This document shows positions 16,024 to 60,374 of a DNA stretch of 64,000 nt, one piece after another (position 1 is the first letter of the stretch; each line of letters starts with the position of its first letter). The translations under genes were made by a program, and so were the position numbers. The notes beneath the pieces are model-generated. The model ran no database searches, had not been told where the DNA came from, and saw only the letters and a program-made list of their open reading frames with translations. The stretch comes from Paragordius varius (taxonomy: Eukaryota > Animalia > Nematomorpha): NCBI GenBank assembly GCA_964247055.1, contig OZ176057.1, forward strand, positions 5,580,001-5,644,000. The letters run 5' to 3'.

Positions 16024-16101
16024 TATTGTTGAATAATGTTTAAATTACGGTACAGAAGAAAAATAAAAAACGTGAAATGAAGTAAAATGTTAATGTGAAC
16101 G

Positions 16102-16127: not shown

Positions 16128-16214
16128 AAATTGTTAGCCATTAGAAAACAGGTAAAAATGTGCGCGTTTTTTGCTATATGTAATAAAATAGGTAGTTTGT
16201 TTTAGGCGCATTAA

Positions 16215-17923: not shown

Positions 17924-18235
<312 letters not shown>

Positions 18236-22240: not shown

Positions 22241-22432
22241 AAACATCTGAAATCAAAAATATAACTTTTAAAGAATAGTCGTTAATGATTGTGCACTGGA
22301 ATATACTTGGAAAATCGTCATTCAATAATTGTTTATATAAAAAAATAATATCCTAATATTACGCTGATAATGGTTAAAAGTTATTTTAATATCTTGTTTT
22401 GATATTCACCATCAAAAATAAAACCGATTTTA

Positions 22433-30262: not shown

Positions 30263-31333
30263 AAAAATGGTATATTTCATATTAATAATGAGTATCAGCC
30301 CGAAAACATAAATTATTTTTAGGGTCTACTTGAATATTTAAAGGGTGAATTTAAATTGTTAAGGATGAATTTGAATTGTAAATGGTATACATAAACTTAT
30401 ATCAGTGATACTCAAATAACGGCCCTAAAAGTGCGCTATTTCATGGCCATTTAAATTTTTAAGTTAGTAGTACTGCCTGATACCATTACATACCAAGTTT
30501 CCATCTTACACCTTAATTTTTATTGGTAAATTATTATTATATTTAGGAATTTCAACTTCAATTAGAATTAGAAAAAATAATTGAAATCACATTATTTTAT
30601 TTATTTGAATTACTTGACAAGATTTAAGCATTTATAAATGTATATAATTTAATGATATTTATGTGATTTTTAATAATATCTCATTAATTTCCCGAATAAA
30701 ATAAGATGGAGACATATATTACTAATTTATAATTATGTATAATTCATATTTTCGGTTACAGAAGTAATTCTACAAAAAAATGATTTAGAAGATGTCTGAC
30801 GATGTTTTAATAATAATTTGTATTATACAATATGCACATTTATATGTTGAATTCACTTAATGTGGGCAAAGTTATAATACAGTAGCGTATAGTATAAAAC
30901 AAAATTCATCCACAATTAAATAAACAATGGCCAAAAATAATTAAAATTGGTCTACCTACACAAATGAGCATACTGTAATTTTTTAAAATTACAGTAGCGG
31001 CATAAAACAATATTATTCCATAAAATAAAGTGTTTTTTTAAAAAAAACAAGGGGATATTATGGATATGTATATATACAACAAGGCTTGTTTTTTTAACAA
31101 ACATTTTTTATTATTTTATGGACTAATAATGTTTTATGCATACGCCAATGTATTTTGCACACAAGTTTTTTAACAATAAACTGCATTCAAAAATGTTTTC
31201 GCCAAGTCAAAACGGCACATGGAATTAGGAAATTGTTATAGAAAGATTAAAATTTTAATAGAATGGTCGCACGTACTCAATTGTATTTTTATATCTTAGT
31301 TTTTTATAAACCATACATCGTTAAAACCAATAT

Positions 31334-32935: not shown

Positions 32936-33352
32936 TAATATGAGCGGATACTAAAAACTACATAATCTATAATGTGACCTCCTTATACTACTATTTTTAT
33001 AACACACTAATATTTGTTTAAATAAGGGTAAACAAGCCACATTAAAGTACATATAGGTTAAAATAAATTAATATTGTTATTTCAAAAGGTACAGTAGCGT
33101 ATGGTAACAAACAACAAATGCTTAAAATGATCATCATTTTTCTCTATGTTTTACATAATTTTGTATATATTTAGTTATAAGCAAACGTTGTTTTATGCCA
33201 TACGCTACTGTATATTATGTTAAATCAATTTAACGGATATGAACTCACATTATGTGTTGTTTGTCCTATAAATATATATATAGAGGATTATATATGCTTT
33301 AAATTTGTGGTTTGCTAGCTAATATATTAATCTAAAAATTTAAAAAAGCACA

Positions 33353-36300: not shown

Positions 36301-39300
36301 ACAACAAACCTAATTATATATACCACAATTTGAGACATAAGAAATATGAATGGTATTTAAAAATACAATTTAATTAAATAATAAAATTAATTTAAAATTT
36401 CATATAATATGTTTTTTCTAAGTTTTATAAAAATAATTTTAATTTGTAAATAAAAATTTGGATAAGAGAAAGAACACGTGAATACCTCTCTATAAATAGC
36501 GCACCGAAGTATAAGTTGGTTCTTTATTTATATATTATTTTTTATCTGTAAAAAAACGGAAATAAATAAATTTAAATATAAGTACCCAAAGTGACTTGTG
36601 CTACACAATCTCTTAATAAAACGTTAAATTTTATGGTTAAAAATAGACACTCTCATAATATAGCTGCGCTCTATTTATCAATATAAATTTATACAAATAA
36701 TTTACATATATTAAATTAAAATAATTTTGCCCAATTTATAATTGCTTCCGATTGCTGTTTTAACAAATATAATTTTTATGAAAAAGGCTCGAAATGCACC
36801 ATTTATACGATTTACACTTCAAAAATATCCTTAATCATGTCTAGATGATCCTTGAACATTTAAGACAAATTTATTTTGTTAACTTTTATTAATAAAACAT
36901 GTAGGGATATAAACAAAACCGTTTTTGGTTTCACCTTTAAAGATTTTTAAGTTTAGTTATTTGTAATTTGCGTTTATCAACTGATAACCTACTTAATATC
37001 TTGAATATATAAAAAAGGAAAAAAGAGAGATTTAAAAAAAACTATTATTTTAAAATGAATGTTCATTATAAAATTGCAAGTTTTCCAATTATCTCGTTTC
37101 CGCAATATACGGATTCTATTAGATGATGTGTTGATAATGATTATAATATTCGAAACTGTTATTGTGTTTTGTTTTAAAAATAATGCCATGTATTATAATA
37201 ATCTTAATTTTGATAATCTATTGAAAATTTATTATTTTTAAATGAGTTTAGATCGGGGATGCTGAATATGCGGCCCTTTGAGACTTTATGTGCAACCTGC
37301 GAAAAATCTTGATATCCATAATTGATACGAAATGAGCTTATAAAATCTTAATAAAATCAACATTTTTTAAACAATTTTTCTAATTTTGCCCATTCTAATG
37401 GAAGAATTAGAAAAAGTTGTTTGTTGAGTTTTACAGTTATTATATATTTCAAATTTATTATATAGTGCCCATATATTTAAATGCGGCCCGCCAAGCCATT
37501 TGTGTTGGATATCCCTGATTTAGATAATACTTTTCATTTTTCTTATCCTATATTTTATAATATTAGCAATCGAAATGTGCAAAATATTCTAAACAAATTC
37601 AAAGATATACTAAATGCACAAAAAGGTTAGTAATTTGCCTCATCTCAATAATTTTTTAGACTTACCCTAAAATCGGTTTCCAAAGAGTTATTGTATCCTG
37701 TACTATCAAAAGGTATTTTTTATTTGGAGGTGAAAATAAAATTATAAAAACAAAACGTAAAAAATAAAATGCTAATATTTTTCCATTTGATATATATATG
37801 ATTGCTATGTAAAGAATTATATTCACATCCTATTGTGCATAAGCCAAACGATATTTTATTATGAATCAAGATTTAAAAAAATATGTTTGTTTTATTACAA
37901 AATAACAAAGTTTTTACCTTTTGCGTTTAGTTTGTATAATTTAATTTATTTATTGCAATTTATTTCAATAACGAAAGCGTATCTGAATTTGTTTTAGGCA
38001 AACCAACTTTTATTGTTTGGAATGATTCACGCTTCATCCATTATCCAAAGGGAAAAGGAAAAACCAAAGTAAAAAATTTTTTTTTATTCCCATTATTAAA
38101 ATGATGGTTTAGTGAAAGGAATTATTTTTTACAAAAAATACTAAATAAAATCGTTTTTAAACAAATTAATAAATGAATATTTTATTTTGTCTACAAATAA
38201 CTTAAAACTCAAGTTTTCTCTTTGATTTGATTCCCAATTATTCAGTAATATGTAAAATATGAAACTACTATCGTCGCCAGTTCCTATCAAAAAAGCGTTC
38301 GAAAAAAACCTTATATAAAAAATTTAAAAATAAAGTTTTTGAAAGTGCATAAAAATCAATATTATTCATATACTAACTAAAATATCATTATTAAACAGCT
38401 ATAAATAAATATAACAAAAAATATTTCCCTGATTAAAAATGTAAATTAATATTTTGCTGCATAGTTATGCCCGAAAATTTCACTTTTGCAATACAATGTT
38501 GGCAATCATAGTATGTGCCGATTAACTCAAGAAACGGGGAAAACAATCAATAAGGGAATTGTTAAAGTCAAAATCCATAATTTACAACATTTTCTTCCCA
38601 AGTTATTATATTAAATATTCCTACACCTCAAACTCTTAAAAGTTTATATTCCCTAACAATTTGAATTCACCCAAAAATAAATATATGTTTTTGGGATAAT
38701 ATAACTCATCATTAATAAGATTAATTTCTTTATGCATAGTTGATTATTTTTCAGTATTAAATTAATTTAAAACAAATTTTTATTTTTTAAATTCATAAAA
38801 TAGGTGATTTCTAATATTTAAAAACACATAATTAATTTTAGGCTGAATATGAATCGTTCAAAGGTGAATCGAATTGTTCGAGGGTGAATTTGAATTGTTC
38901 AAGAATAAATTTGAGGTTTAAATGGTATATGTAAATAAATTTTAAAATTGCCTTAAGTGGTGTCGCTAAAATTATATATTACTATGTTTTAAATAAATAC
39001 TTAATCGTTTTTAATAGTATGGTATAATACATTGCCAACTTTTCATTAATTACTGCCAGATAGCATTATTTATATTTCAATGCGTAAAATACTATTTACA
39101 TTATATATTTAATGGTTGCTTATTTAACAGTATAGTTGGACAATCTGAAAAACAGTAGCGTATGGAGAAAACAACAAAATGTTAAAAAAAAATTTTTTTC
39201 TTTCTTTTTTTTCCATACACTACTGTGTTGCATATTGCCCAATATAGTGTAAAATAAGCAACCATTAAAATGCATATTGTAATAAAAATAGTTTTAAGTA

Positions 39301-42300
39301 CACAGCTGTATTGAGGTTAATAAACTTCATAATCAACCTCTTTTAATGTTATAACAAGTGTAAAAATGTTTATTTTAAAAGAAAAACTAGATTTTAACCT
39401 TATGAATTTTATTTTATACGGGTTTAAATTGTAATTAATAAATGAATGATATTAATGATTTGGTGGGTGAATATTTTAAAATCTTTATAAAAATATACTA
39501 GAATAGGATATTTTGCATATTTTATGGAAATCAATGATTGTAACCAATAAGTGATTAATTTTAGTGATGATGATATACAGTATGAAGCTAGAAAGTTATT
39601 AATTTCATTGTCAAATAGCTTATACAACAAAGGGCAGTATTATTGGCTTATAATTATTTTTTTCGCTTTTTACTATTTAATAAGTCAATAATACTCTTTG
39701 CTGCATATGCTATTCAATTAATAACTTTCTAGCAATATATACTTACTCTTATTTTTTAGCTCAATCTAATATAGGATGAAGTAGTTTATTTGAAGATATA
39801 CCTACATAGTTTCTAACATAATATATTTCTATAAATACAGTGTTGCAGGTAGTTCATAACTTTTATTATATTATATTTTTATAAAAATATTTATTTAATA
39901 AACTGTTTTAAATTATCATGTATTTTTATAAAATTAAACTCTAATTTTATAATATACCATTTACAGTTCAAATTCACCATGGAACAATTTAAATTCACCC
40001 TCGGACAAACCAACCCTAAAATAAATTATATGCTTATTAATGTTAAAATAATATTTTTAAAAAATAATATTTTTTTAAATTATTATAATACTGAAAAAAT
40101 AATAAACTGTACTATAAAAATATATTTTATATCAATAATGAGTTATATTAGCCCGAAAACACATAATTTATTTTTAGGGTGTATTTGAACTGTAAATGTA
40201 ATACCATACAAAAAATTTTAAGCTGTTTTTAAACGGAAAAATATTTTCTTTGTTCGATAAGAATCGACCAAATTCATATTTATAATTATTATATTACATA
40301 TTCCATGTAGCAAATATTTATATATTAAATAATACTTATTTTAGCCGAACATTATAAAGTAACTAACTATAAGTTGATTTAAAATTTTTAATCAACGAAA
40401 AAAATAATTATAAACTATTATAAAAAGATTCATTTAGCTTGCAATGAAATCGCCGCAGCCAATACAATGTGGCCTAATTGTAGAATCCCAGATGTTGAAA
40501 AGTAAACTACAGTAAAAATTGAAATTATACGGACAAAACGTATTAAAAATAAAGACAAATATTTTTTTATAAGAACGTCTTACTTTATAAACTGTTTTTT
40601 TTATAAACACATTTTTTTAGACTGCAAATTATGAATAGACGTATAAATTAGTGACACAATTAATATTTCAAAACTGTAATAAACAGGTTATGTGGTTAAG
40701 ATTAAAAAAGTATGGTCGTCTTTCGAAAAAAATTGTCTTTTAAATTTTACATTTTGTCCGTATAATTTCAAAATTTATCATTTTTAATTAACATTCATTT
40801 TCTTGTCTTTTTTTCAAAATTATAATTAATAAGCGATTTGTTAATAATTTAAAATAATTTTTATGTTTCTCAATTTTAATAAGAATTTTAAATTTTGCAC
40901 CGGGGCAAAATATATGCATATTTTAGTTATATTCAACAAAGATTAAATTATTTAAAATTATCAATGAGCCTATTAGTTCATATGAGAAAATCTATTTTAA
41001 ACGTTTTACAGTAAAAATTGATATCATACTATGGACTAACGTGAAAATATAAAGACAAATATTTTTTTCAAATGACAACCCCATACTTTGACAAATCTTG
41101 CTTTTTCCATATAAGCCATTTAATGTAAAATATGTAATGATTGTGAGTAATATACATTTCTATTTGACACTTGCAATATTAAATAATGAATTTTATTGAA
41201 AAAAATAAGATTTAAAAAGTAGTATGGGGTTGTCTTTTAGAAAAAAATATTTGTCTTTATATTATTACGTTTTGTCCGTATAATTTTTAAAATTTTTACT
41301 GAAAATTTCAATTGTAATTATATAATGATTGGGTTCCAATTTATTTCTCTATAATACTTTACAGTTTAAATTATATGGAAAAGAATTAGTTTATGGCTGT
41401 TTAAAAAAACATTTTTACATTCTGTGTGTACCTTAAAATTTTACAGTATGCATTTTAATGGTTGCTTTTTCACACTATAATTGGGCAATTTGCAACACAG
41501 TAGTGTATGGAAAAAAGAAGGGAAATAATTGTTTATTCGACATTTTGTTGTTTTTTCCATTCATTACTGTGTGCTGTTAAAAATAACCCTACTACAGTGT
41601 AAAATAAGCAACACTATTAAAATGTATACTGTAATGTAAAATACACCGATTTTTATTGAGACAGAATGAATGAAACAAATTGGTTGCAAATCATAACTTC
41701 GATCGTGACAGCTGATGATTTAAGTAAAAATTTTATTTTATACAGAGCTTATATTTAAAAAGTATGGGCCAAGTCAATTTTACCCCTAAATCTTTAAATA
41801 CACGATTTCCAAGGGCTGAAATCAATAAAAAAATTAAGATATTTTGCAAACATACATTAAAAATTATAGACATAAAGAGTGAAAAATTAATATATAGTTG
41901 TGTAAAAAAAGCCTAAAAATTGAACGATTTTTTTATTCTATAAAATTATCACAGGGATGTCCAACGCAAATCGTGTCGCAATTCGCCTTTTTAACTCAAA
42001 GAACCCGACAGGCTGCATTAAAAATATATATATGGGCATTAATTTTTTATCAATATATCATTTTTATCTAATTCAATGCCAATGGATAAATGTACACAAA
42101 TTTGTTAAAGATATCAATTTTACTGAAAATTTGTAATATTTATGCGAGCCTCATGTTGAATACCCCTGGTTAAATAAGCCCTTAGAATTCCTAGATTCCA
42201 ATTTAAATTCCTATTTTGCTTTTTTGAAATAGGAATATTAGATAACTATTTTAAAACATATTTACATAATAATACTCAAAATTATAAAACCATGTGTTTC

Positions 42301-43475
42301 TATGTTTTACGATATAGATAAAACTAGGATAATTGGGCGAAATCGAGACATGAAAACGTTAGAATTCCCATTTTATGTATGTATGATAATATATTTAATT
42401 TAACTTTTTAGTATTAAATATAAGTTAGAAATTATATAGATAAAAGGTCTAAAACATTAAGAATATTTTTTAAAAACAACCCCATACTTTTAATTTCTTG
42501 ATTTTTTCTAATATAACTCATTGTTTTAATTGGCAAATTATAAAAAAGATAATGTATATTGGTACATAATAAATAATATATTTTGTATTAAATGACTTCC
42601 ATAAAAAAAATTCGCTTCAAAATGGTTGTTTTTTGAAACCAAAATTTTTGTTTTTTTATTAGTAATTACAAGTTTTATCCGTATTATAGTGTGGATTTTA
42701 ATGAATGGTTGCTTATTTCACACTATAGTATGGCGATTCGCAACATAGGAATGTATATGGAAAAAACAATCAACAAAATATTTAAAAAACAATTTATTCC
42801 TTTTTTTTTACATACAATCCTACTAAATACACAACTATTGTGTGAAATAAGCAACCATTCATTAAAATGCATACTGTGTAATATATAAATTTTTACAGTA
42901 AAAACTGAAATTATAATACGGAGAAAACGTAAAAATATAAAGAAAAATATTTTTTTCTAAAAGATAGACATACTTTTTAAATCTTGATTTGTTTCAATAT
43001 AATTCATTTTTTAAATGGCAAAGTATGAAATAGAGATATATATATATATATATATTACTAACACAATCGATTCTAGATTTTACGATTGTAACTAAATAGC
43101 TTATAGGGAAAAAATTAAAGGTTTAAAAAGTATGGTGGTTGTTTTTTAGAGAAAAAAATATTTGTCTTTATATTTTACGTTTTTTGTCCATCCGTATAAT
43201 TTCAATTTTTACACTGTACTGTATTTTCACTTATCTAGCTTTGTCCAGCCGCCAAGTTAATTACTTATGAAATATATTGCGTCCTGGGTATTTTTCGTAA
43301 TAAAGAACCCATCTATATAAAAAATTACACGCATTTCCAGGATATGTTTAAACATATTGTACCGTATGGGACGAATGAATATATCGAATTGCAAAGTACA
43401 CTTAAAAAACAGTCTCAACACAAATACAATGCCATCGATAAACTCTTGAATGAATGGGGAAATAAATTAACATAA
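33353..43475 (+). CDS. Paralogue 1 of an unidentified secreted-protein gene; exons 33353-33427, 34329-34423, 37567-37625, 37660-37712, 37998-38068, 38465-38601, 39841-39848, 40438-40501, 41665-41723, 42318-42376, 43239-43475; 1-nt deletion in the A-run after the ATG
   Basis: The nine 3' exons are phase-compatible and stop-free, with mostly synonymous differences to paralogue 2; exon 1 is 75 nt vs 76 nt (recent lesion or homopolymer error); the exon 2 to exon 3 link is inferred. Confidence 0.65.
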
Positions 43476-43974
43476 TATTATGATTAAATATAAATATATT
43501 TTTTGGGACAATTTAAACTATTTTTTCATTAAAAAAATAGATCAATTATACCATGAAGAGAGTGAGTGTTTATAATTTCGTATATAATTGTTAATAAATT
43601 ACCAAATATTTATATTAAATTCCTCAAACGTTAACCAATGTCCGGTTAAAATAAAAAGTTAACTACAAATATTTTAAAAACAAGTGGATTTTCAACTACA
43701 TAAAACTATGTAATTCTTAATTATATGTTTGAATATATAGATTCAACCCCATTTCATAACCCAAAAGAATATTAAAAATTACGTTCCGTATAATTTTAAT
43801 TTAAACTGTATGTCGTCGTTTTGTCTTTCCATATAATTTCAATTTTTAGTATACCATTTGCACTTCAAGAGTGTCTTTAACACTTCAAGTTGGTCGTTTA
43901 AAATTTCTAAATTTTGATTTAACCATAATTTTTGCCTGTATTTTTTTATTTATAGATTAAAATAAACACCCAAC

Positions 43975-43990: not shown

Positions 43991-45080
43991 ACCTATACAT
44001 GTACATTCAATAAATGTTTCAATTAGTTAATATTTGTTTTACACCATTTATATAATAAGTAGTCTTGTGTTTGCTAAGTTATCTAGTACATCTGTTCGTT
44101 CTCTTCCTTTATCGGATTTTGAACCTTAAGTAGTCTTCCGGGATAACAATAGAATGCATTCAAAAATGATTTTGCCAACTATCAACGGCACATAGAATTA
44201 GGTAATTGTATAGAAAGATATAAAGTTAAAGAATGGACATACGTACTCAGTTGTGTTTTTATTTCTCAGTTTTTTATAAATCATAGATTGTAAAAACCAA
44301 TATTATACCATTTACAAAATTCAAATTAACCCTTGAATAATTCAAATTCACCCTCAACAATATAAATTCACCCTAGTCAATTTAAATTCACCCTAAAAAT
44401 ATATGTGTTTTGGGGATAATATAGCTCATCATTAATATGAAATATATTTTTATGACATTTCTTATTTTTTCAGCTTATATTAATTTTAGACAGAATTTCA
44501 TATTTTAAAAATATTATAAAATAAAGGAAATTTTTAATCTTAAAAAACACATAATTAATTTTAGGGTGAATTCGAATTGTTTGAGAGTGAATTGGAATTG
44601 TTCAAGGGTGAATTTGATTTTTTCAATGGTGAATTTGAACCGTTAATGGTATATAATATGAACGGATACTAAAAACTACATAATCTATAATGTACACTCC
44701 TTATACTACTATTTTTACAATACACTATTTGTTTAAATAAGGGTAAACAAGCCGCATTAAAGTACATATAGGTTAAAATAAATTAATATTGTTGTTTCAA
44801 CTTGTACAGTAACGTATGGTAACAAACAACAAATGTATAAAAATAATCATCATTTTTCCCTATTATTATACAATTTTGATATATTTAATTATAAGCAAAC
44901 GTTGTTTTATGCCATACGCTACTGTATATTATGTTAAATCAATTTAACGGATATGAACTCACATTATGTGTTGTTTGTCCTATAAATATATATATATATA
45001 TATATGTTTATACAGGATTATATATGCTTTAAATTTGTAGTTTGCTAGCTAATTATTACTCTAAAGATTAAAAAAGCACA

Positions 45081-46002
45081 ATGCACAAAAACCAGATTTT
45101 TATTTTAATCATTATCTTAATCATTCCAAACACCGTATGTGTTGCAATAATTACAGGTAAATTTGACATTATATTTTGAGGATTATTTGATAATTTTTTT
45201 ACTTTATTCAAGAATTAGCATGCCCTTTTTAGCCCAGAGGCGCACAGTTGAAAGGGTGCCGAATTTTAAAATTGTTTAATATTATTACAAAAAATAGGTA
45301 TTTCAAAGTTATTATTTTATTTATGAGTGGTCATGACCACGGTTTGAAGTTTAAGTCATATTAGCCATTTATATCAAGTGTTAAATAATTTCTTTTAATG
45401 GGTATCTAATTTCGAGCGGATAACATATAAAAATCATGATATATATTATATAATGAGGAGACAAATTTAGAAACATGCATTCTATCAATTGGGCGCGTAA
45501 TTCAATTAAAAATATTTTTTACTAAAAGTTAGTATGCATCTCAATCTACCCGCCAAAAATAATACTTTTGATTTTATTATGTGGCGAAAGAAACTGGCAT
45601 ATACAGTAAAAACTGAAATTATACAGACAAAACGTAAAAATATAAAGACAAATATTTTTTTCTAAAAAATAACCATACTTATTTAATCTTGATTATTTAT
45701 ATAAAACTCAATTTTAAACTCTAAAGAATAGATGTATATTGGTAACACAATTAATTACATATATTACGATTGCTATTGATTGATTATAATAGGATAAATT
45801 ATGGTTGTCTTTAAAAAAAGTCTTTATATTTTTAAGTTTTGTCCGTATAGTTTCAATATTTAGTGTAAGGTATTTTATTAAAAATATAATTAGTAACTAG
45901 TAAATATTTTGATTCTACTTTGACACCAAACTTCCGATAATAATTTATAAATTATTTTTTAAATTAAATTATAATATCTATAAATCGTCGTAATAATAAC
46001 TC

Positions 46003-46050
<48 letters not shown>

Positions 46051-49000
46051 TAAAAATTGAATATACGGACAAAATGTAATAAAGACAAAACCACACTTTT
46101 AAAACTTTAATTTTTCTCATATAGGCTATTTAATTATAATTGTAAATCTAGAATTAATAGTGTTAGTAAAATAACTCTCTATTTCTGGTTCAACCATTTA
46201 AAACAAGTTACATTGAAAGAATACAAAATTTATATAGTATGGTTGTCATTAAGAAAAAAATAGTTGTCTTTATATTTATACATTTTGTCCGTATAATTTT
46301 AGTTTTTACTCTATCTATATAATATAACATAATTATATATTATTTTATTAGGTACTGTAACAAAATTTAGTCAATCAACTACGTTTTTGCTGAAATCTCA
46401 AAGAGATATAAATTTAAATAGCGGGCATAAATCTTATAAATTGGTAAGCTTTAAAGTAAATTATTAATTTATTAAAACCATAAAGATATCATAAATTATA
46501 ATGATATCAAGAAGGAAAAAAAACTAATACTAAAAATTTATTATGATCTTTGGGGTAAAACAAAAATTTAAATGATAACCACTCAATTTTTTATTTGACT
46601 TATATAATCGATTGATTGGTTTATATAATAAACGGAAAAATTAGAGACAAATTATATGATTATCATTAAAAAAATATGGTTATTTATGATGTTTATGATT
46701 ATAGAAGGGGAATACTGGTGAGGTTTGTACTGGACAATAGATGTTAATCATAATCCAATAATTAACTTACAAAAACCCTAAGGAAATGCTAATAAGCAAT
46801 TGGATATTAAAAAAGATTTAAAAAATTACACAAGCCTAAACAGTTGGCTTTCTAAAATGATATTTGAATAGGATTTAACAAAGTAAAAGTCTTTTATCAT
46901 ACATGTTTTAATATGAAAAAAATTTTCATTTCATAGCTAATTCCGATAATAAGAGTTTTCACAATATGAGATACTTAAACTGTTCTCTTTTAACACTCTA
47001 CAAACATTTTGGGGTAGTTTTGTATCATACAGCCATTTGAAATTTGAATATTTTAAATATATTTAAAATTACGGCGAATTTATAAATATGCTTTCTTTAG
47101 TCTTTTAAGCGCATTAAATTTTTTTTAAAAATGCAAAATTGTATAACATCATCTCAAACTTTTCTGCCGCCATTTTTTTCTAATTTTTAATCGCTAATGA
47201 AACAGGCAAAAATATGTATATTATGGTTAGAAAATGTAAATAATTAACTTTAGGAATTTTTCAAGCTACATTTTAGAAGCAAAAACTTAAATATATTTTG
47301 CCTTTAATATCAGCTGTTCGTTTGAGTCGTGTTTTGTGTCCTAATTTTAGACTCTAGCAGTCACAAAAGAAAACATTAGCTTTAAATTAAATTTTGACTA
47401 AATTGACATTCAAAACTGTAGTTAATTTATAAAATTGATTTCTGGGATACTAAACTACCCCAAAAGGTAAACTAGGACAAAAAAGTAAAAAGGTGATAAA
47501 GTGTAAATCAATAAAAATGAAAAATTATATTTACGCAACAATTTGTAGCCTCTGAATCCAATAATAATTATTTTATTTGAAAAATGAGAAAGAAATCCCT
47601 GCTAAATTAGTAAGTTTATCTGCCTCACAATACATAAATTTTTTTTTGATATAAATAACACTTACTTGCTAAAAATATGGATTCCATGGTTTTTAGCGCA
47701 TTTACATTTTTTAAAAATATTATTTATGAAATACCTAATTAAAACCTTCAATTTTTATTTTACATTGCAAAAAACTTTTTATTTCGCTTCATAAATCTTT
47801 TGGAGGGACAATTGACAATTATTTTTATAAGTGTTTGTTAGAGTTACAGGGCTATTAAAACGCCTATAAAATAAGTTTATTAGATTTGTAGCTAAATTAT
47901 TTTAATATTTATAAACCAGCCTCTTGGATTTAATATAAAATCTCACAAAAAATTTGGCCTGAAAAACCATAAATGCTTATTTATTATATCACCATCTTTA
48001 TTTTTATTTATGCAATAAAAACTGAATTAACGGACAAAATGTAAAGAGATAAAGACAAATTTTGCTGACAACAACCTCATACTTTTTAAATCTTGATTTT
48101 TTAAAAATAACTCATTGTTTTAAATTGCAAAGTATGAAATCGATGAGTGTCTTTGTAAAACAATCTATTATATATATTTTGTAGTTGTAGCTTTATAAAT
48201 TATACGAATGGTTTGAAAAGTAAGGGTGAAACAATTTGTTTTGATATATCTACGTTATGTCCGTATAATTTTAATTTTTCTCCATATAATGGTGAATACC
48301 TCTCTATAAATAGCGCACCGAAGTATAAGTTGGTTCTTTATTTGCATATTATTTTTTATCTGTAAAAAAACGGAAATCAATAAATTTAAATATAAACACC
48401 CAAAGTGACTTGTGCTACACAATCTCTTAATAAAACGTTAAATTTTAACAACGTTAATAAAAAATCTTCATAATAGAGCTGCCCTCTATTTATCAATATA
48501 TAATTTTTACAAATAATTTACATATATTAAATTAAAATAATTTTGCTCAATTTATAATTGCTTCCGATTGCTGTTTTAACAAATATAATTTTTATGAAAA
48601 AGGCTCGAAATGCACCATTTATACGATTTACACTTCAAAAATATCCTTAAACATGTCTAGTTAATCCTTGAACATTTAAGACAATTTTATTTTGTTAACT
48701 TTTATTAATAAACCATGTAGGGATATAAACAAAACCGTTTTTGGTTTCACCTTTAAACATATTTAATTTTAGTTATTTGTAATTTGCGTTTATCAACTGA
48801 TAACCTACTTAATCTCTTGAATATATTAAATATGAAAAAAGAGAGATTTAAAAAAAACTATTATTTTAAAATAAATATTCATTATAAAATTGCAAATCCA
48901 ATTATCTCGTTTCCGCAATATACGGATTCAATTAGCTGATGTACTGATAATGATCGTAATTTTAGATTCGAAACATTAGTTATTGTGTTTTATTTTTAAA

Positions 49001-52000
49001 ATAATGCCATGTATTATAATAATTAATATTGTGATAATCTAATATTGTAAATTTATTATGTTTAAATGAGTTTAGATCGGGGATGCTGAATATGCTGCCC
49101 TTTGACACTTTATGTGCGGCCTGCGAAAAATCTTGATATCCATAATTTATAGGACATTTGCTCATAAATCTTAGTAAAACCAACATTTTTTAAACAATTT
49201 TTCTAATTTTGCCCATTCTAATGGCAAGAATTAGAAAAAGTTGTTTGTTGAGTTTTACAGTTATTATATATTTCAAATTTATTATATAGTGCCCAATATT
49301 TGCGGCCCGCACCATTTGTACAATACTTTTCATTTTTCTTATATATCATTTTATAATATTAGCAATCGAAATGTGCAAAATATTCTAAACAAATTCAAAG
49401 ATATACGAAATGCACCAAAAGGTTAGTAATTTGCCTCATCTCAATAATTTTTTAGACTTACCCTAAAGTCCGTTTCCAAAGAGTTATTGTATCCTGTACT
49501 ATCGCAAGGTATTTTTTTCTATTTAGAGATCCAAAATTAAAATTATAAAGACACAACGTAAAAATGCTAAAAAAAATTCCATTCGATTTATATATATATA
49601 TATATATATATATGATCACTATTGTAATTGACTGTTTACCATACAATCCATATCCTATTGTACAAGCCAAACGATACTTTAATCAAGATTTAAAAAATAC
49701 GTGTGTTTTTATTACAAAATAACAAAGTTTTTACCTTTTGCGTTTAATTTATATAATTTAATTTATTTATTTCGTTTTAGGGAAACCAACTTTTATAGTG
49801 TGGAATGATTCACGCTTCATCCATTATCCAAAGGGAAAAGGAAAAACTAAAGTAAAAAAATTTTTTTACTCCTGTTATACTAATTTTTTAAATTTAATGA
49901 TGGTTTAGTAAAAGAAATTATTTTTTAAAAAAAATACTAAATAAATAAACAAATTAATAAATAATTTTATTTCGTCTACGAATTCCTTAAAACTCAAGTT
50001 TTCTCTTTGATTTGATTCCCAATTATCGCTGCCAATTCCTGATCTGTAATAAGCGTTCAAATAAACTTCATATAAAAAATACAAAATAATAATGCCCAAA
50101 TGTTTTTGAATGTGCAAAATCAATATTTTCCATATTCTAACTAAAATACCATTATTAATCCCAGTTATTTTAGCCTGTTTATTTAAATATACCCAAAAAT
50201 AACTTTTAACTCTATTAAAAATTGCTGATCAATATTTACTCCATAGTTATGCCCGAAAATTTCAATTTTGCAATACAATGTTGGCAATCATAGTATCTGC
50301 CGATTAACTCAAGAAACGGGGAAAACAATCAATAAGGGAATTGTTAAAGTCAAAATCCATAATTTACAACAATTTCTTCCCAGGTATTAATTTTATTATT
50401 AGTATTATACTTAAAAAATACCTAAAAAGAATTAACAAAATTATATTATTAAATACTTAATTATTGTATTTACACTATTAGTAAATTAAGATTGCCAACT
50501 ATTTACAAATATTGCCAGATAGTATTATTAATATTTCAATGCGAAAAATACCGTTTAAAGTATGCATCTTAATGGTATTCCACACTATGAATGGACAAAC
50601 TGCAACACAGTAGTGTATGCAGAAAACAACAAAATGTTAAAAAAATAATTTTTTCTTTCTTTTTTTTCCATACACTACTGTGTTGCAAATTTCCCAATAT
50701 AGTGTAAAATAAGCAACCATTAAAATGAACAATGTAATAAAAATAGTTTTAAGTACACAGCTGTATTGAGGTTAATGAACTTCATAATCAACCTTTTTTA
50801 ATGTTATAACAAGTGGAAAAATTGGTTTATTTTGAAAGACAAAAATTTTAACCTTATGAATTTTATTTTACAAGGGTTTTAATTGTAATTTAGAAATAAT
50901 TATTAACGATTTGGTGGGTGAATATTTTAATATCTTTATAAATATATAATAGAATAGGATATTTACATATTTTATGGAAATCAATGATTGTAATCAATAA
51001 GTGATTAATTTTAATGATATTGATATACAGTATGATTAAGTATACATTGCTAAAAAGTTATAAATGATTGTGCCAAATAGCATATACAACAAAGGGAAGT
51101 ATTATTGGCTTTTAGTTATTTTTTTCACTTTTAAACTGAATAATACTCTTTGCTGCATATGCTATTTAGTTAATAACTTTATAGCAGTATATAATTACTC
51201 TTATTTTAAATCTCCATCTAATATAGGATGAAATAGTTAATGACTATTTTATTTAAAAATGTACATACATAGCCTTTTTAATTATAATATTTAAACCAAT
51301 ATAGTGTTGCAGGTATTCTCATAATTTTAATTCTAGGTTTTACATATTTATTTTGACAAACTGTTTTAAATTATTATGTATTTTTATTAAATTTAACTCT
51401 AATTTTATTCTATACCAATTCTTCAAATTCACCCTTGAACAATTCTAATTCACCCTCGAATAAACCGAATTCACTATAAAGTAAATAGTGTTTTTAAAAG
51501 TAAAAATTTTTTAAGAAAATGAAATTTTTTTAAATTAATATAATACTGAAAAAATAATAAACTGTGCCATAAAAATATATTTCATATCAATGATGAGTTA
51601 TATTCGCCCGAAAACACATAATTTATTTTTAGGGTGAATTTGTATTTCGAGGGTGAAATTGTTCGAGGGTGAATTTATACAAAAAATTTAAGTTGTTTCT
51701 AAACGGAAAAATATTTTTTCCTTCGATAAGAATTTAGCGAAATCCTATTTATAATTATTATACTACCTATTCCATGTAGCAAATATTTATATATTAAATA
51801 ATACTTATTTTAGCCGAACATTATAAAGTAACTAACTATAAGTTGATTTAAAATTTTTAATCAAAGAAAAAAATAATTATAAACTATTATAATTTTTTTT
51901 ACAAAAATCACATAAAAAGATTCATTTAGCTTGCAATGAAATCGCCGCAGCCAATACAATGTGGCCCAATTGTAGAATCCCAGATGTTGAAAAGTAAACT

Positions 52001-54957
52001 ACAGTAAAAATCAAAATTTTACAGACAAAACGTAAAAAATATAAAGACAAATATTTTTTTTTATAACAACGCCTTACTTTATAAACTTGATTTTTTTTAA
52101 ATATAATACATTTTTTTAAACTGTAAAGTATGAAATAGACGTGTGAATTGGTAACACAATTAATATTTTAAAACTGTAAGTGAAAAAGGTTTATATGGGA
52201 AAAGTTAAGGTTTAAAAAAGTATGGTTGTCTTTCAAAAAAAATTGTCTTTTAAATTTTACATTTTGTCCGTATAATTTCAAAATTTGTCATTTTTAATTA
52301 ACATTCATTTTCTTGTCCTTTTTTCAAAATTATAATTAATAATCGATTTGTTAATAATTTAAAATAATTTTTATGTTTCTGTTTCTCAATCTTAATAATA
52401 ATTTTAAATTTTGCTCGGGGCAAAATATATACCTATTTTAGTTATATTCAACAAAGATTAATTATTTTTTGAAATTCTCATGAGCCTATTAAGTTTTCAT
52501 ATGAGAAAATCTATTCTAAACATTTTACAATAAAAATTGATATCATACTATGGACGTAAAGACAAATATTTTTTAAAAGACAACCTCAAACTTTTTCAAA
52601 TCTTGCTTTTTCCTATATAAGCTATTTAATGTAAAATAAGTAATAAATGCCTTAACTAATATATATATTTATATTTACCACTTGCAATATTAAATAATGA
52701 ATTTTATTGAAAAAAAAATAAGATTTAAAAAGTATGGCGTTGTCTTTTAGAAAAAATATTTGTCTTTATATTTTTACGTTTTGTCCGTATAATTTTTAAC
52801 AAATTAAATGAAAATTACAATTGTAAAATATATAATGATTGGGTACGAATTTATTTCTCGATAGTACTTTACAGTTTAAATTATATGGAACAGAATTAGT
52901 TTATGGCTGTTTAAAAAAGAATTTTTCATTCTGTGTGTACTTTAAGATTTTACAGAATGCATTTTAATGGTTGCTTTTTCACACTATAGTTGGGCAATTT
53001 GCAACATAGTAGTGTACGGAAAAAAGAGAGGAAATAATTGTTTATTCAACATTTTGTTGTTTTTTCCATACATTACTGTGTGTTGTTGAAAATAACCCTA
53101 CTACAGTGTAAAAAGGCAACACCATTAAAATGCCAACTGTAATGTAAAATACACCGATTTTTATTGATGCAGAATGAATGAAACAAATTGGTTGCAAATC
53201 ATAACTTTGATCGTGACAACTGATGATTTAAGTAATTTTATTTTATACAGAATTATTATGTTAAAAAGTATGGGTTCAGTCTAATTATTTTAACGCATAT
53301 TTTAAATACACGATTTCCAAGGGCGTAAAAAAATACTTTTTGATATTTTGCACATATACAGTAAAAATAATAGACATAAAGAGTGAAAAATTAATATATT
53401 TAGTTGTGTAAAAAAAGCCTAAAAATTGAACGATATTTTACCATATAAATTTATCACTGGGGTGTCCAACGCAAATGGTGTCGCTATCCGCATTTTTAAC
53501 TCAAAGAACCCGATCGAGCTGCATTACAAATATATATATGGGCATTAAATTTTAAACACAATATAACATTTTTATCTAATTCAATGCCAATGGATAAATG
53601 TACACAAATTTGTTAAAGATATCAATTTTACTGAAAATTTGTAATATTTTTGTGAGCCTCATGTTGGATACCCCTGATTAAAAAAGCCCTTAGAATTCCT
53701 AGATTCCAATTTAAATTCTTATTTTGCTTTTTTTTTGACATAGGAATATTAGATAACTACTCTATAATATAAAATTTTTTTAAGGATATTACAATTTATT
53801 ATTTTAATGTTTTACGATATAGATAAAACTAGGATAATTGGGCGAAATCGAGATATGAAAACGTTAGAATTCCCATTTTATGTATGTATGACATATAGTT
53901 TAATTTAACTTTTTAGTGTCAAATATAATTTAGAAATATATAGATAAAACGTCTAAAACATTAAGAATATTTTTTAAAAACAACCCATACTTTTCAAATC
54001 ATGATTTTTTCTAAAATAACTCATTGTTTTAATTGCAAAGTATGAAATAAAGATTTATATTGACGCAATCAATAATCTTGTAATTTAAAATGATGAGTTA
54101 TATTAAAAAAAAAGTCTTAACAAGGTATGCTTTTCTTTTGAAACCAAAATTTGTTTTTTTAGTAGTAATTACAAGTTTTGTCCGTATTATAGTATGCATT
54201 TTAATGAATGGTTGCTTATTTCACACTATAGTATGGCGATTCGCAACATAGGAATGTATATGGAAAAAACAATCAACAAAATATTTAAAAAACAATTTAT
54301 TCCTTTCTTTTTTTCCATACAATCCTCGTGTGTTGCAAATATAAGCAACCATTCATTAAAATGCATACTGTGTAATATATAAATTTTTACAGTAAAAACT
54401 GAAATTATACGCGAACAAAACGTAAAAATATAAAGATAAATATTTTTTCCTAAAAGACAGTCATACACGTTAAATCTTGATTTATTTCAATATAACTCAT
54501 TTTTTAAATGGAAAAGTGTGATATATATATATATATTACTAACACAATCAATTCTATATTTTACGATTGTAAGTAAATAGCTTATAGGAGAAAAATTAAA
54601 GGTTTAAAAAGTATGGTGATGGTCTTTTAGAGAAAAAAATATTTTTCTTTATATTTTACGTTTTTTTGTCCATCCGTATAATTTCAATTTTTACACTGTA
54701 CTGTATTTTCAATTATCTAGCTTTGTCCAGCCGCTAAACTAATTACTTATGAAATATATTGCGTCCTGGGTATCTTTCGTAATAAAGAACCCATCTATAT
54801 AAAAAATTATACGCATTTCAAAGATATGTTTAAACATATTGTACCGTATGGAACAAATGAATATATCGAATTGCAAAGTGCCCTTAAAAAACAGTCTCAA
54901 CACAAATACAATGCCATTGATAAACTCTTGAATGAATGGGGAAATAAATTAACATAA
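45081..54957 (+). CDS. Paralogue 2, ~304-aa putative secreted glycoprotein of unknown family; exons 45081-45156, 46352-46443, 49363-49421, 49456-49508, 49781-49851, 50247-50383, 51305-51312, 51930-51993, 53173-53231, 53823-53881, 54721-54957
   Basis: Signal-like MHKNQIFILIIILIIPNTVCVAIITG; GT-AG exons join in phase (915 nt); terminal exon differs from paralogue 1 at 8 synonymous vs 2 non-synonymous codons, and the GKPTFIVW exon at 4 synonymous vs 0; the direct splice from 46443 to 49363 is inferred from phase only. Confidence 0.72.
46006..46047. repeat. (TA)n microsatellite abutting a family-A MITE; shorter tracts near 33990 and 49587
   Basis: Direct reading. Confidence 0.9.
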
Positions 54958-55949
54958 TATTATGATTAAATATTTATATATTTTTTGTGCCAATTTAAAA
55001 TTTTTTTCATTAAAAAAAAATGAGCAACTCCATGTAAAATAGTTAAGTATTCGCATAGAAGGTTTCCAATAAATTACAACATATTGATATCAAATTCCTT
55101 AAACGACGTTTTAATTAACCAATGGTTAGTTAAAATAAAAAGTTAACTACAAATATTAAAACAAGTGGATTTTCAACTCCATAAAACTATATAATACTTA
55201 ATTATATGTTTGAATGTATAGATTCAAACCCCTTTTCACAACCCAAAAGAATATTAAAAATTACGTTTTGTCCGTATAATTTCAATTTTTACTGCAAATC
55301 AAACCAACGATTTATAAATTTTAAAATACTTTATAGATTATATATACAGGAAAGATTGATATATGGAGAAAACGTAAAAATAAAAATATAAATATTTTTT
55401 TAAAAAGGCAACCATACTTTTAAAATCTTAAATTTTTAATATAACTCATTGTATAAAATGGCAAAATATGAGATAGAGTTATATATTAATGATACAATCA
55501 ATTCTATATTTATAATTGTAATTAAATAGCTTATAAAGAAAAATTAAGATTTAAAAAAGTATGAGTTTGTCTTTTGAGGCCAAAGTAATATTTATCTTTA
55601 TATTTTTACAGTAAAAATCGAAATTATACTGACATAATGTAAAAATATAAAGACAAACTTTTTTTTCAAAAGACAGCTCCATACTTTTTTAAACCTTAAT
55701 TTATCATATAAAAAACATTTATTTACAATCGTAAAATACATATAATTGATTCTGTTACCAATATTCATTTCTATATTATGTTTTGTAGTCTAAAACAATC
55801 AGTTATATTTAAAAAAATTGAAATTAAAAAAGTATGGGATTCTCTCTTTGAAAAAAAATATTTGTCTTTATATTTTTATCTTGTTTTGTCCATAGTATAT
55901 AATTTCCACAATTTTTACTCAATGCAAATGGTATATATAAATAAATAAT

Positions 55950-58433
55950 TTATTTCAATTTTTGCAAATAATTTTTACAGACAAAAAATGTTTCAGATGA
56001 TTCTTTGCGTGAACTTGGAGGTTTGAAAGTTTTTACAAAGGCAAATCTCTTTGTTAAATCACGTTTAAAGCCATGTGAATTCTTACCATCCCAAATCTAA
56101 ATAAAAAGATATAAAAAGATTTGTGTTCATTATTAAATACTACATTACAAAAGAGTTTTAAACAATTACAGTAAAAACGTAAAAATATAAGACGAACATT
56201 TTTTTTCTAAAAGACAACCAACCAGATATTTTTATTAAAGTTTCTCATATAAGCTACTTAGTTCCAATTGTAATAAAGGGAATTGATTGTTTTAGTAACA
56301 CATATCTCTATTTTAGACTTTGTCAATGAGTTATATTTAAAAAGTATGGGGTTTTCCTTTGGAAAAAATATTTGTCTTTATATTTTTACCTTTTGTCCGT
56401 ATAATTTCAATTTTTACTGTAATTAATATGATTAAACAATTACAGCAAAAGATGAAATTATACAGACGGACAAAAGGTAAATAAAAATATAAAAACAAAT
56501 TTTTTTTTCTTCAAAAGACAACACCATACTTTTTCAAACCATAATTTATCTTATTAAAAACATTATAACAATCGTAAATTAAGTAATTAATTGCATTACC
56601 AATAAACATCTCTATTTTATACTTGGAGTTTAAAACAATGTGTTATATTTAAAAAAATCAAGATTTAAAAAGTATGGTTGTTGTCTTTTAGAAAAAATAT
56701 TTGTCTTTATATTTTTACCCTTTGTCCGTATAATATCAATTTTTCTTCTATATAAATAAGTTTAAATTAAATATAAAAAAGATAAAAAGACAACCCCATA
56801 CGTTTTAAATCTTGATTTTTTTAATTATAACTTATTATTTAACAATTTTATATCTAACATTCGTAATTAAATAGCTTATAGAGGAAAAATTTAGGTTTAA
56901 TAAAAATTATGGTTGTTGTCTTTTAGAAAAAAATATTTGTCTTTATATTTTTACGTTTTGTCGGTATAATTTCAATTTTTACTGTAAATAATTATCATAT
57001 ATAGGATAAAATATTATATTATAAGAATAAAAATGTAAAAATCCAATATTTTTATATAAACTATATATTTGCATTTTAAATTTATCAAAACCTATAGATT
57101 AAAACTGTAAAAAAAATTATAAAATATACCATTAATTAATTCACCCTTGAACAATTCAAATCCACCCTAAAAATAAATTATAAGTTTTCGGGCTAATATA
57201 ACTCATTAACAATATGAAATATATATTTACGACATAGTTTATTTTCCAGCATTTAAATTTTAAACAAAATTTCATAAAAATATTAATATAAGTTATATTT
57301 AATAATCTTTAAAATACTCATTTTATTTTAGGGATTTGAATTGTTTAAGGAATTTAAGTTGAAGAGTAAAATTAAATTCTAAAATATAAAATCAATTCTG
57401 ATACCAATAATCATCTCTATTTCATTTTTCCGTTTTAAAAAATGAGTTTTACTTAAAATAATTATATAAGTATGGTTGGTTGTCTTTTAGAAAAAAAATA
57501 TTTGTGTATTTACGTTTTGTCCGTATAATTCCAATTTTTACTGTAATATATTCAATTTTAATCACAATATTAAATACTATTTCTCATTGATTACTTAAAA
57601 CTTAAAAATTCATAACACATCAGTATTTATAAAATTAAAAAAATTTATAAATTTTGTTTTTATAAAATTATGTCCATACTTTGCAAACAAAGTTGCCCCC
57701 AAAATACAAAACTTTAAGTGATAATTGGAAAGCAGAATAAGCCAATTGCATTATGAGATCATGGTCACAGTTTCGATCACCTGTTTTATATCGGAATAAA
57801 ATTAATTTATAAAGACAAAAAATACCCCAAGAAAAAATGGAAAAAATGTAAATGTCTTTATAAAACCTGTGGCATTTGGTGCCATATCACTCAAGACAGT
57901 ATGGAAAAGATTATTCTCTTTATCGTTTAAAGATGTTTCAGGCAAATTATTTCCATTTTCTTTAGCATTGCAATTATAAATAATTTGATGGAATTTTTCC
58001 AAAAGACCGGGATCATTTATGTCTTGATGATTTAAACAAACAACTCCATCAATTGGTGCTATGCTAGATTTATCGAATGCGATAACTTTTACACTATCTT
58101 TATGGTTAAATACATATTAATATACTTTGGGGGTGGATTTGTTTTATAACTTGGGCCCATGAACCTGGAGCGGCTCCGCAATCCAAAAATCTTAGGCTTA
58201 GGGGTTCAAATTTAGCCTCAAAATGGGTAAGGACATTAAATTTTCTTTCAATGTCTAGTAATTTAAAAGCACTGCGAGCTCGAAAATTCTTTTGTTGAGC
58301 AAGTTTAACAAATGGATCAGTAGTATGCCTAATTTTTACATTTTATAATTAACCTTATCATCCATTGTTTTGAGGAACGGGTAAGTTTAATTTTTGCCGT
58401 AACTTTCTTGCCAATCTCTGGAAAATGATTCAT
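55950..58433 (-). CDS. MRM2: RrmJ/FtsJ-family rRNA 2'-O-methyltransferase, mitochondrial MRM2/FTSJ2 type, ~253 aa; exons 58433-58354, 58328-58126, 58097-57867, 57780-57680, 56096-55950
   Basis: Motifs QWMIRHTTDPFVK, FRARSAFKL, LDCGAAPGSWAQV, VLSDMAPNATG, CDHD, GGNFVCKIW, KPPSSRKESSE; K-D-K-E catalytic tetrad present; 762-nt spliced ORF; start codon choice less certain. Confidence 0.92.
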
Positions 58434-58520
58434 AAAATTTTATGAAATCAAAGCACATTGCCTCCCAACACAAAAATGCATTTCTACTTGTTTTTTTTAA
58501 AAAAAAATAATTTAAATTAA

Positions 58521-59095
58521 CACTTGGATACAACACACTCATTTTAGTCCTTCGATTCAAATTGGGGTAGTTAAATACCCCAGGCCTGTTTAAAATTAAA
58601 TTCCCCAAAATGGGAAAATCGAAACCATGGCAAAATTTTGCACTTATATAACATTAATAAACCGAAATATATAAAAAAATATATTTAAAAATACTTGATA
58701 TTACATTTTTTAAGCTAAAACCGAAAAATAAAAATTTAGTCAACGTGACATGTGTGCAATGGTAAAATTAAAATGATACAAAATAAATAGCTTTTTCTAT
58801 TTCCATCAATGTTAGATGTAATTTAAATCAAAGATTAGCTTTGATTTTACCCTTAAAATTATATGAAGACGATATTTTGCAAAAATTTTGTAAAATAAAA
58901 ATGGCGTCGAAGTGGTTTGACATGGAACTTTTTTTTCAAAACAAAATTTTATTTAGATATTTTGGCATATTTATATAATTTATAGTAGGATAGAAGCATA
59001 AATTTAAATTCGGACCGTTTTCTTCAGTAATTTTTTAAAAATCCTAACTTAAATTTAGTCTGGGGTATTTAGATACCCCAATTTAAATCGAAGTG
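58521..59095. mobile_element. Family-C element, second full-length copy
   Basis: TTAA|CACTTGGATACAACAC...TCGAAGTG|TTAA; collinear with 16215-16786. Confidence 0.85.
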
Positions 59096-60374
59096 TTAAA
59101 AAAATGATTTAAATTAGGCAAGAAATGGTAATAAAATGTGACGAAACTGTCGATTATGCCTAAAAAACCTATGTCCAATTAATATATTCTCTTTTTAAAA
59201 TACATTCTTATAATTTTGGCTCGACGTATCTATATTTTGTGATGGCAGCTAATTATTTTGGGCCTAATAAAATATGCTATAAGGTCTCGTCTTAATATCT
59301 ATGTCTGGTTTGAATTTTGTGATAAACTAAGGAAATATTTGAATTGTTTTATTTTATTTGGAGGAAACATTGTTCCAAAGTTAATATGCCTACTAAAAAT
59401 TTAAGGTTCCATAAAAGGCTCAATATATCCATGAAGCTCAACATTCATATAATTATAAGATCTATTAACATTTAGGGGAGGTTACAGGGCGTAATGGTTG
59501 GATTATAAGATTTTCTGTTTTAATTTAAATACGACTTTTGTGAATAGTTTATATCCCACACCGATTTGAATATTTTAGAAAGTATTTATTTCTTTATTTT
59601 TAAGGCGCATAAGAATTTTGAAAAATTTAATAAGCTTTTTGCCACCATTTTTCCTAAATTTTATATTCCTTAAATAAACTAATACTATAGTGAAATGTTA
59701 AATAACTTTTTTACAAGCAAAAGCTTGATATTTATTGATATTAAATTCCTTTGTTTATTTCAATCATGTTTCAAGTTGTCGCTTCTACAAATTATATATT
59801 ACAAGATTAAGTTTTTTACAAAACTACCCCAGTTATCGCAGACAAAAAACTGAAAAGGTTAAAGTTTAAGAGCTAAATGGCATTGAAAAAATATATCTTA
59901 ATTTTATATTTTAAAAACAATTTATTTTGTATCATGCGCGTAAAAGTTAAATATAATAATATTCTTAAATTATGCTAATAATATTAATATATTTAAATGG
60001 TTATGAGTTTAAAATACTTTAAGGGTTATAAAGCGTTAGATATGACAGTTTTTTTACATGTTTTCGGCCCTGGAACTAAAAAAAGTCTAATAAGTATTTT
60101 ATACAATGCATTAGATTTTCCGAAAAATTACTATATATTTAATAGTCAACTAGTTGTCAATTAATAAAAGAATCTTAATTTCAGGCTTTAGGATAAAGAA
60201 AAGTTTTTCAATTCACAAATGTAGGATAATCCTGATTAACCAAAATTAATATAACATGGATTAATTTTTTTCATTATATATTAAAAAATTGAACAGTTAG
60301 AAGCAATTAGCTTTAAAATAACCATCATTAAAATGTTATATACCATTTATTCAAATTGCCCCTTGAAAAATTCA

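What the first reader, a model, noticed from the sequence alone, without database searches (positions are those of the whole stretch)
58098..58353. 25-nt and 28-nt spliceosomal introns in a conserved housekeeping gene
Seen: the MRM2 frame is restored only by removing GTTAATTATAAAATGTAAAAATTAG (58329-58353, 25 nt), which rejoins QWMIR/HTTDPFVK, and GTATATTAATATGTATTTAACCATAAAG (58098-58125, 28 nt). Both, like the 34-nt intron, are 3n+1 and create an in-frame stop if retained. They lack a clear polypyrimidine tract. Known: introns this short are typical of ciliates, nucleomorphs and a few reduced parasites such as dicyemids, and are well below the usual minimum in model animals; stop-containing non-3n tiny introns are linked to NMD surveillance in Paramecium. 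Inference: an animal-type, TE-rich, non-compact genome whose spliceosome handles about 25-nt introns alongside kb-sized introns and microexons, which suggests modified splicing machinery.
Basis: partly seen in the sequence, partly recalled or inferred. Interest (0 to 1): 0.85.

Follow-up and report, generated by a model that had tools for sequence, protein, structure and literature searches.

The report
Tiny 25/28-base introns, hairworm MRM2
An ordinary mitochondrial housekeeping gene of a horsehair-worm-like animal is interrupted by two introns of only 25 and 28 bases, one of them where a related hairworm has an 11,480-base intron; published work reports introns this short in only two other animal groups, but I could obtain no RNA to show them being cut out.

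Summary
Confirmed at DNA level. The minus strand carries an intact five-exon MRM2 gene (253 aa) with GT-AG introns of 25, 28, 86 and 1,583 nt, in that order. Its nearest relative is the hairworm Gordionus (tree support 98/94). The 28-nt segment sits at the same codon and phase as an 11,480-nt Gordionus intron, and five other bilaterians have a phase-1 intron in that loop: an ancient intron, shrunken. The 25-nt segment is the only cut that restores a gap-free match to Gordionus, at a site intron-free in all eight other species checked: probably a gain. Both occur in DNA of three samples, so they are not assembly errors. Exon variants favour silent changes (14:11, p about 1e-4), arguing against a pseudogene. 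No RNA was available, so splicing is inferred. Not supported: the NMD argument (in-frame stops arise by chance in 86% and 61% of shuffles), a 34-nt intron in this gene, and any need for altered machinery (myxobolids keep U2 and U2AF). The scan has noted this intron class repeatedly on other DNA of this genome. I found no paper reporting it in hairworms.

The parts
58354..58433 (-). MRM2 exon 1 (coding part; the ATG at 58433 is provisional, an upstream exon ending at the acceptor-like TTTTCCAG at 58418 is not excluded)
   Evidence: 8 of 11 residues identical to Gordionus MRM2 157-167
58329..58353 (-). Intron 1, 25 nt, GT-AG, phase 2, context AAG|GTTAAT...TTAG|G; no branch consensus, A-run at -9..-5; position absent from 8 other species, probable gain
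58126..58328 (-). MRM2 exon 2 (SAFKL lysine, SAM-binding DCGAAPGSW motif)
   Evidence: Pfam FtsJ 1-41, E 3.9e-9; best PDB match MRM2, E 3e-11; best of 1.84 billion representatives is Gordionus MRM2
58098..58125 (-). Intron 2, 28 nt, GT-AG, phase 1, candidate branch site TTAAC with A at -9; same codon and phase as the 11,480-nt Gordionus intron; ancient bilaterian position
57867..58097 (-). MRM2 exon 3 (SDMAPN catalytic aspartate; about 20-residue insertion also present in Gordionus)
   Evidence: Pfam FtsJ 47-103; best local match Gordionus; alignment
57781..57866 (-). Intron 3, 86 nt, phase 1; same position in Gordionus (4,138 nt) and the fungus Conidiobolus (56 nt)
   Evidence: 1-nt indel variants fall here
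57680..57780 (-). MRM2 exon 4 (VCK catalytic lysine)
   Evidence: Pfam FtsJ 107-138; MRM2 residues 163-194
56097..57679 (-). Intron 4, 1,583 nt, phase 0, filled with dispersed MITE-like repeats, clear T-rich tract; same position in Gordionus (886 nt) and Conidiobolus (47 nt)
55950..56096 (-). MRM2 exon 5 (KPPSSRKESSE catalytic glutamate) with stop codon
   Evidence: Pfam FtsJ 140-181; MRM2 residues 196-237

Best explanation
The locus is the working MRM2 gene (mitochondrial large-subunit rRNA 2'-O-methyltransferase) of a nematomorph-like animal, and both segments are genuine introns removed by the major (U2-type) spliceosome. I2 is an ancient intron shrunk to 28 nt (shown: same position and phase in relatives). 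I1 is probably a lineage-specific gain at an AG|G proto-splice site (shown: absent in 8 species; inferred: gain rather than repeated loss). Inferred mechanism: recognition across the intron. U1 pairs with a short donor helped by exonic bases (AAG|GUUAAU, AAA|GUAUAU). U2 pairs with a branch adenosine only 5-9 nt before the AG (UUAAC in I2, an A-run in I1). Low G+C marks the intron and there is no polypyrimidine tract, as described for myxobolid and dicyemid tiny introns. Retention would truncate the protein, but that follows from length and base composition and is not evidence of selection for NMD.
For: Exons 2-5 tile the FtsJ profile in order with the K-D-K-E residues. I2 lies in the same alignment column and phase as the Gordionus 11,480-nt intron, and Lottia, Chamberlinius, Saccoglossus, Limulus and Centropristis have a phase-1 intron three columns away in the same gappy loop. 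I1 is the only frame-restoring cut and gives a gap-free match to Gordionus SSRKWMIRHLKDPYVK. Both segments are present at unchanged length in contigs of 3 samples from 2 studies. Listed exon variants: 14 synonymous to 11 non-synonymous where 20% synonymous is expected, p=9.5e-5, no nonsense; exon indels are 3 nt, intron-3 indels 1 nt; no listed variant touches a GT or AG. Intron-like composition. Precedent in animals (PMC13644364, PMC6543705).
Against: No RNA run holds the sequence and no contig shows a spliced joint; all four runs look like DNA. Only 40 of 83 variants were listed, and haplotypes are not independent. I1 has no positional homologue and no branch consensus. I2 boundaries have three in-frame alternatives. 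A second MRM2 copy elsewhere in the genome was not excluded, and degenerate H2A and H4 copies lie in the same window.
Confidence: 0.86

Rival explanations
1. The gene is a pseudogene or dying copy, and the 25-nt segment is a disabling insertion that happens to begin with GT and end with AG.
For: A GT..AG bridge arises in 14% of shuffles at I1; I1 has no homologous position; nearby H2A and H4 copies are broken; haplotypes differ by up to 6%.
Against: Excess of silent changes, only 3-nt indels in exons, no nonsense variant; catalytic residues intact; I1 is present in every contig laid across it in 3 samples; no second copy in the window.
Confidence: 0.05
2. The introns are real, but I2 is cut at other boundaries (16, 28 or 40 nt, using donor 58113 and/or acceptor 58086), or both introns are often retained, as for microsporidian tiny introns.
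For: Four in-frame solutions exist for I2; weak signals; microsporidian short introns splice at about 25% efficiency (cited in PMC13644364).
Against: Donor 58125 matches the Gordionus position exactly and has the better exonic context; acceptor 58098 has a branch-like TTAAC at -9. Paramecium introns of 23-26 nt are mostly spliced efficiently (PMC12862383).
Confidence: 0.12
3. The lineage has a structurally altered spliceosome (changed U2/U6 or lost or replaced U2AF, SF1, SF3b parts) that is required for these introns.
For: The donor-to-branch distance is only about 16-20 nt, far below the roughly 50 nt needed in mammals (own knowledge). An unchecked scan note reports a U2 gene with a lengthened linker (s1-373685). 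RBM17/SPF45 replaces U2AF for some human short introns (10.1101/784868).
Against: No splicing gene lies in the window. Myxobolids keep a canonical U2 branch-pairing region and U2AF1/2. The same machinery must also handle the 1.6-kb intron with its normal T tract. This rival concerns the machinery only and is compatible with the introns being real.
Confidence: 0.25
4. The segments are removed or bypassed by a non-spliceosomal route (somatic DNA excision as with ciliate IESs, ribosomal bypass), or are assembly errors.
For: They are short and AT-rich like IESs; adult hairworm DNA may be germline-rich (own knowledge); contigs drop rare variants.
Against: No joined form in any DNA contig, and the segments are in two independent studies; GT-AG ends; I2 at an ancestral spliceosomal position.
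Confidence: 0.02

Closest known systems
Ultra-short introns of myxobolid myxozoans (median 22-27 nt; Hadjez et al. 2026, PMC13644364)
   Same: Animal parasite; GT-AG; under 30 nt; at conserved positions; reduced donor; no polypyrimidine tract; A residues shortly before the AG; short introns next to short introns.
   Different: Different phylum (ecdysozoan-type, sister to Gordionus in the tree). The region is repeat-rich and not compact, the same gene has a 1.6-kb repeat-filled intron with a normal T tract, and a relative has 11.5 kb at the same site. RNA support exists for myxobolids, not here.
Dicyemid tiny introns (Dicyema; median 27 nt, two thirds under 30 nt; PMC6543705)
   Same: Length range and canonical ends in conserved genes.
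   Different: In dicyemids most introns are tiny; here lengths rise 25, 28, 86, 1,583 nt along one gene.
Ciliate tiny introns (Paramecium 23-26 nt, Stentor 15-16 nt)
   Same: AT-rich, minimal signals, low G+C as a mark.
   Different: Ciliates are unicellular with uniformly small introns; the Paramecium stop/3n bias cannot be shown here (stops at chance level).
MRM2/FTSJ2 (RrmJ/FtsJ family, Pfam PF01728)
   Same: All four catalytic residues and the SAM motif; best solved-structure match is MRM2, ahead of SPB1 and TRM7.
   Different: Short N-terminus if the ATG is right; two loop insertions shared with Gordionus; extra intron I1.

Membership tests
U2-type spliceosomal intron | GT...AG ends | tested here: met
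   no listed variant in the terminal dinucleotides
U2-type spliceosomal intron | Removal restores a conserved reading frame | tested here: met
U2-type spliceosomal intron | Position and phase shared with introns of orthologues (I2) | tested here: met
   Same column and phase as Gordionus; same loop and phase in 5 other bilaterians
U2-type spliceosomal intron | Position and phase shared with introns of orthologues (I1); supportive, not required for a gained intron | tested here: not met
   No intron there in 8 species
U2-type spliceosomal intron | Branch-point sequence | tested here: inconclusive
   TTAAC with A at -9 in I2; only an A-run in I1; such motifs are common in AT-rich DNA
U2-type spliceosomal intron | Absent from mature mRNA; lariat formed | not testable with these tools
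   No RNA run holds the stretch; the four runs laid behave as DNA
U2-type spliceosomal intron | Present in genomic DNA of independent samples | tested here: met
   3 samples, 2 studies
U12-type intron | Donor RTATCCTT and branch TCCTTAAC | tested here: not met
   Donors GTTAATTA and GTATATTA
MRM2/FTSJ2 | FtsJ domain with K-D-K-E and GxAPGxW motif; closer to MRM2 than to SPB1 or TRM7 | tested here: met
MRM2/FTSJ2 | Mitochondrial import and rRNA methylation | not testable with these tools
   Start codon provisional
Nematomorpha (host identity) | Groups with a known hairworm | tested here: met
   Sister to Gordionus at 98/94, 47% identity against 38-41% for others. One gene, one hairworm, both long branches, and no named nematode or priapulid in the tree; species not identified
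NMD-visible tiny introns (Paramecium type) | Excess of stop-containing or non-3n introns over chance | tested here: inconclusive
   Stops expected in 86% and 61% of shuffles; n=2

The most novel reading that the evidence does not exclude
A hairworm lineage is a third independent origin of sub-30-nt introns in animals, but in a transposon-rich, non-compact genome. A 5'-proximal class of introns was both shrunk from kb size (I2: 28 nt against 11,480 nt in Gordionus) and newly gained at tiny size (I1), while downstream introns stay large. This would imply a distinct, position-dependent recognition mode working beside the normal one, and would uncouple tiny introns from genome reduction.
Probability: 0.4. 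Interest if true: 0.8.

Novelty: new variant of a known kind. Interest (0 to 1): 0.58.

Why it matters
A September 2026 survey of 51 animals found sub-30-nt introns only in myxobolids and Dicyema, linked them to genome reduction, and predicted further cases (PMC13644364; whether it sampled a hairworm I could not check). This is such a case, in a repeat-rich genome, with a relative carrying a 400-fold longer intron at the same site. That makes the limits on intron size, and the supposed link to compaction, testable within one phylum and one gene. Practically, gene finders and aligners with minimum intron lengths above 28 nt would call such genes broken, which could inflate reported gene loss in this group (inference).

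Tried and rejected
RNA evidence: no RNA holder was found. Runs X1-X4 gave no joints; several loose ends fall at or beside GATC, one forming GATCGATC, which suggests Hi-C-type DNA libraries. H2B did not identify the organism (best full-length matches about 87%; not in the collection). An exon-2 word search found one weak fragment. The metagenome scan found nothing. P0124 and P0132 proved to be intronless metagenome genes of other organisms. Portunus had no locus on record. I first read the introns I3 and I4, shared with Gordionus, as hairworm-specific; rejected, because the fungus Conidiobolus has both. I1 and I2 are not copies of other window sequence (best matches 19/25 and 20/28). No paper on short introns in Nematomorpha was found, and two hairworm genome preprints never mention introns. 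As the operators required, all database searches were run exon by exon by reference and the search with the joined protein was left out; exons were joined only inside local scripts, for frame checks, alignment and trees.

Full report
Observation. With two more introns, 57866-57781 (86 nt) and 57679-56097 (1,583 nt, full of dispersed repeats), five exons give an open frame of 253 residues; retaining I1, I2 or I3 stops it at 34, 100 or 192 codons. I found no 34-nt intron in this gene. Shuffling the junction regions gives a frame-restoring GT..AG in 13.6% and 8.1% of trials, and the inner bases are much poorer in G+C than the exons (p=1e-4). I1 has exactly one frame-restoring solution; I2 has four, of 16, 28, 28 and 40 nt.

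The gene. Searched exon by exon, exons 2-5 match Pfam FtsJ positions 1-41, 47-103, 107-138 and 140-181 in order. The best solved-structure match is MRM2 rather than SPB1 or TRM7, and exons 4 and 5 abut at residues 194/195. The K-D-K-E residues and the SAM motif are intact. The ATG at 58433 is provisional; a MITE begins 83 nt upstream.

The organism. A histone stem-loop and histone genes mark it as an animal. The best match to exon 2 among 1.84 billion representatives is MRM2 of the hairworm Gordionus, though only narrowly by score. The whole protein is 47% identical to it against 38-41% for other bilaterians, shares two loop insertions, and is its sister in trees (SH-aLRT 94; 98/94). This is one gene, one hairworm and two long branches, so 'nematomorph, not G. 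montsenyensis' is likely but the species is unknown. Published hairworm genomes are 200-300 Mb and transposon-rich, which fits the window (AT-rich, MITEs, a satellite, an 11.7-kb duplication).

Are they real DNA? Contigs from four runs (three samples, two studies) span both segments without indels and show no joints. The runs behave as DNA, and loose ends at GATC suggest Hi-C. The assembly-error refutation therefore fails. No RNA run holds the stretch, so splicing was not observed.

Is the gene alive? Among the listed variants, exons carry 14 synonymous and 11 non-synonymous changes where 20% synonymous is expected (p=9.5e-5), no nonsense change, and only 3-nt indels, whereas 1-nt indels fall in intron 3. 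Variants in I1 (+4, +14) and I2 (+9) spare the GT and AG. Caveats: 40 of 83 variants were shown and haplotypes are related.

Intron history. Mapping each protein on its own locus shows Gordionus introns of 11,480, 4,138 and 886 nt in the same alignment columns and phases as I2, I3 and I4. Lottia, Chamberlinius, Saccoglossus, Limulus and Centropristis have a phase-1 intron of 120-3,468 nt in the same loop as I2, three columns away in a gappy stretch. The fungus Conidiobolus has introns at the I3 and I4 sites. So I2-I4 are old positions and I2 is an ancient intron at 28 nt. At I1, none of eight species has an intron; Gordionus has the same 11 bases up to the cut and continues in frame. I1 is best read as a gain at an AG|G site; loss in all the others is less parsimonious but not excluded. 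Lengths rise 25, 28, 86, 1,583 nt along this gene and fall along the Gordionus gene; one gene cannot establish a positional rule, though unchecked scan notes report one elsewhere in this genome.

Mechanism (inferred). The ends are U2-type, not U12. I2 has TTAAC with the adenosine at -9; I1 has only an A-run at -9..-5; neither has a real pyrimidine tract, unlike I4. This matches the description of myxobolid and dicyemid tiny introns: reduced donor, bare AG, weak A residues upstream, with the U2 branch-pairing region and U2AF1/2 conserved (PMC13644364). The likeliest route is recognition across the intron by a largely standard major spliceosome, with exonic bases helping U1 and low G+C marking the intron (low G+C goes with efficient splicing in Paramecium, PMC12862383). 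Altered machinery remains possible (about 25%) but nothing here shows it. The NMD argument carries no weight: shuffled introns contain an in-frame stop in 86% and 61% of trials.

Novelty. Sub-30-nt introns are known in animals from myxobolids and dicyemids. I found no report for Nematomorpha in the held library, which lacks most subscription papers. The variant here is the setting: a non-compact genome, kb introns in the same gene, a 400-fold length difference from a relative at one site, and an apparently gained 25-nt intron. The scan has recorded this class many times on other DNA of the same genome; those notes are unchecked and were not used as support. Verdict: real at DNA and comparative level, splicing inferred (0.86); new variant of a known kind; interest 0.58.

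Noticed in passing
window 32936-43808 and 44654-55294 (+): Tandem duplication of about 11.7 kb at 83-88% identity. It seems to hold an unidentified multi-exon gene on the + strand, with a candidate 42-nt intron at 34424-34465 that ends like MRM2 intron 2 (AACCATAAAG) and a possible 13-nt microexon near 34680.
   Followed up: partly
window 15650-16031 (-), 17924-18235 (-), 18548-18913 (+): Histone cluster: H2B is intact; H2A has a 1-nt frameshift in a run near 15885 and other lesions; H4 has an in-frame stop near 18155. Both broken copies keep their 3' stem-loops. Degenerate copies or assembly errors.
   Followed up: no
window 58516-59099 and 16210-16790: Two copies (88% identical) of a 580-nt MITE-like element with short terminal inverted repeats; one sits 83 nt upstream of the provisional MRM2 start codon, in the promoter or an unrecognised first intron.
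   Followed up: partly
window 4484-4972, 7461-7790, 10284-10661 (-): Three exon-like frames; the last has a signal-peptide-like start and an immunoglobulin-like stretch. No significant Pfam match. Possibly a lineage-specific secreted protein gene.
   Followed up: partly
window 19569-30300: Long GC-skewed tandem satellite with a unit of about 21 nt, already noted by the scan (s1-257572).
   Followed up: no
window 57600-58500, runs X1-X4: Haplotypes differ by up to about 6%, including in-frame 3-nt indels in exons 2 and 3, which implies very high heterozygosity or pooled or cryptic lineages.
   Followed up: partly
L004 (Gordionus MRM2): The annotated protein has an N-terminal extension of about 135-150 residues, and an isoform that reads into the 11.5-kb intron (P0122); these may be annotation artefacts.
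   Followed up: no
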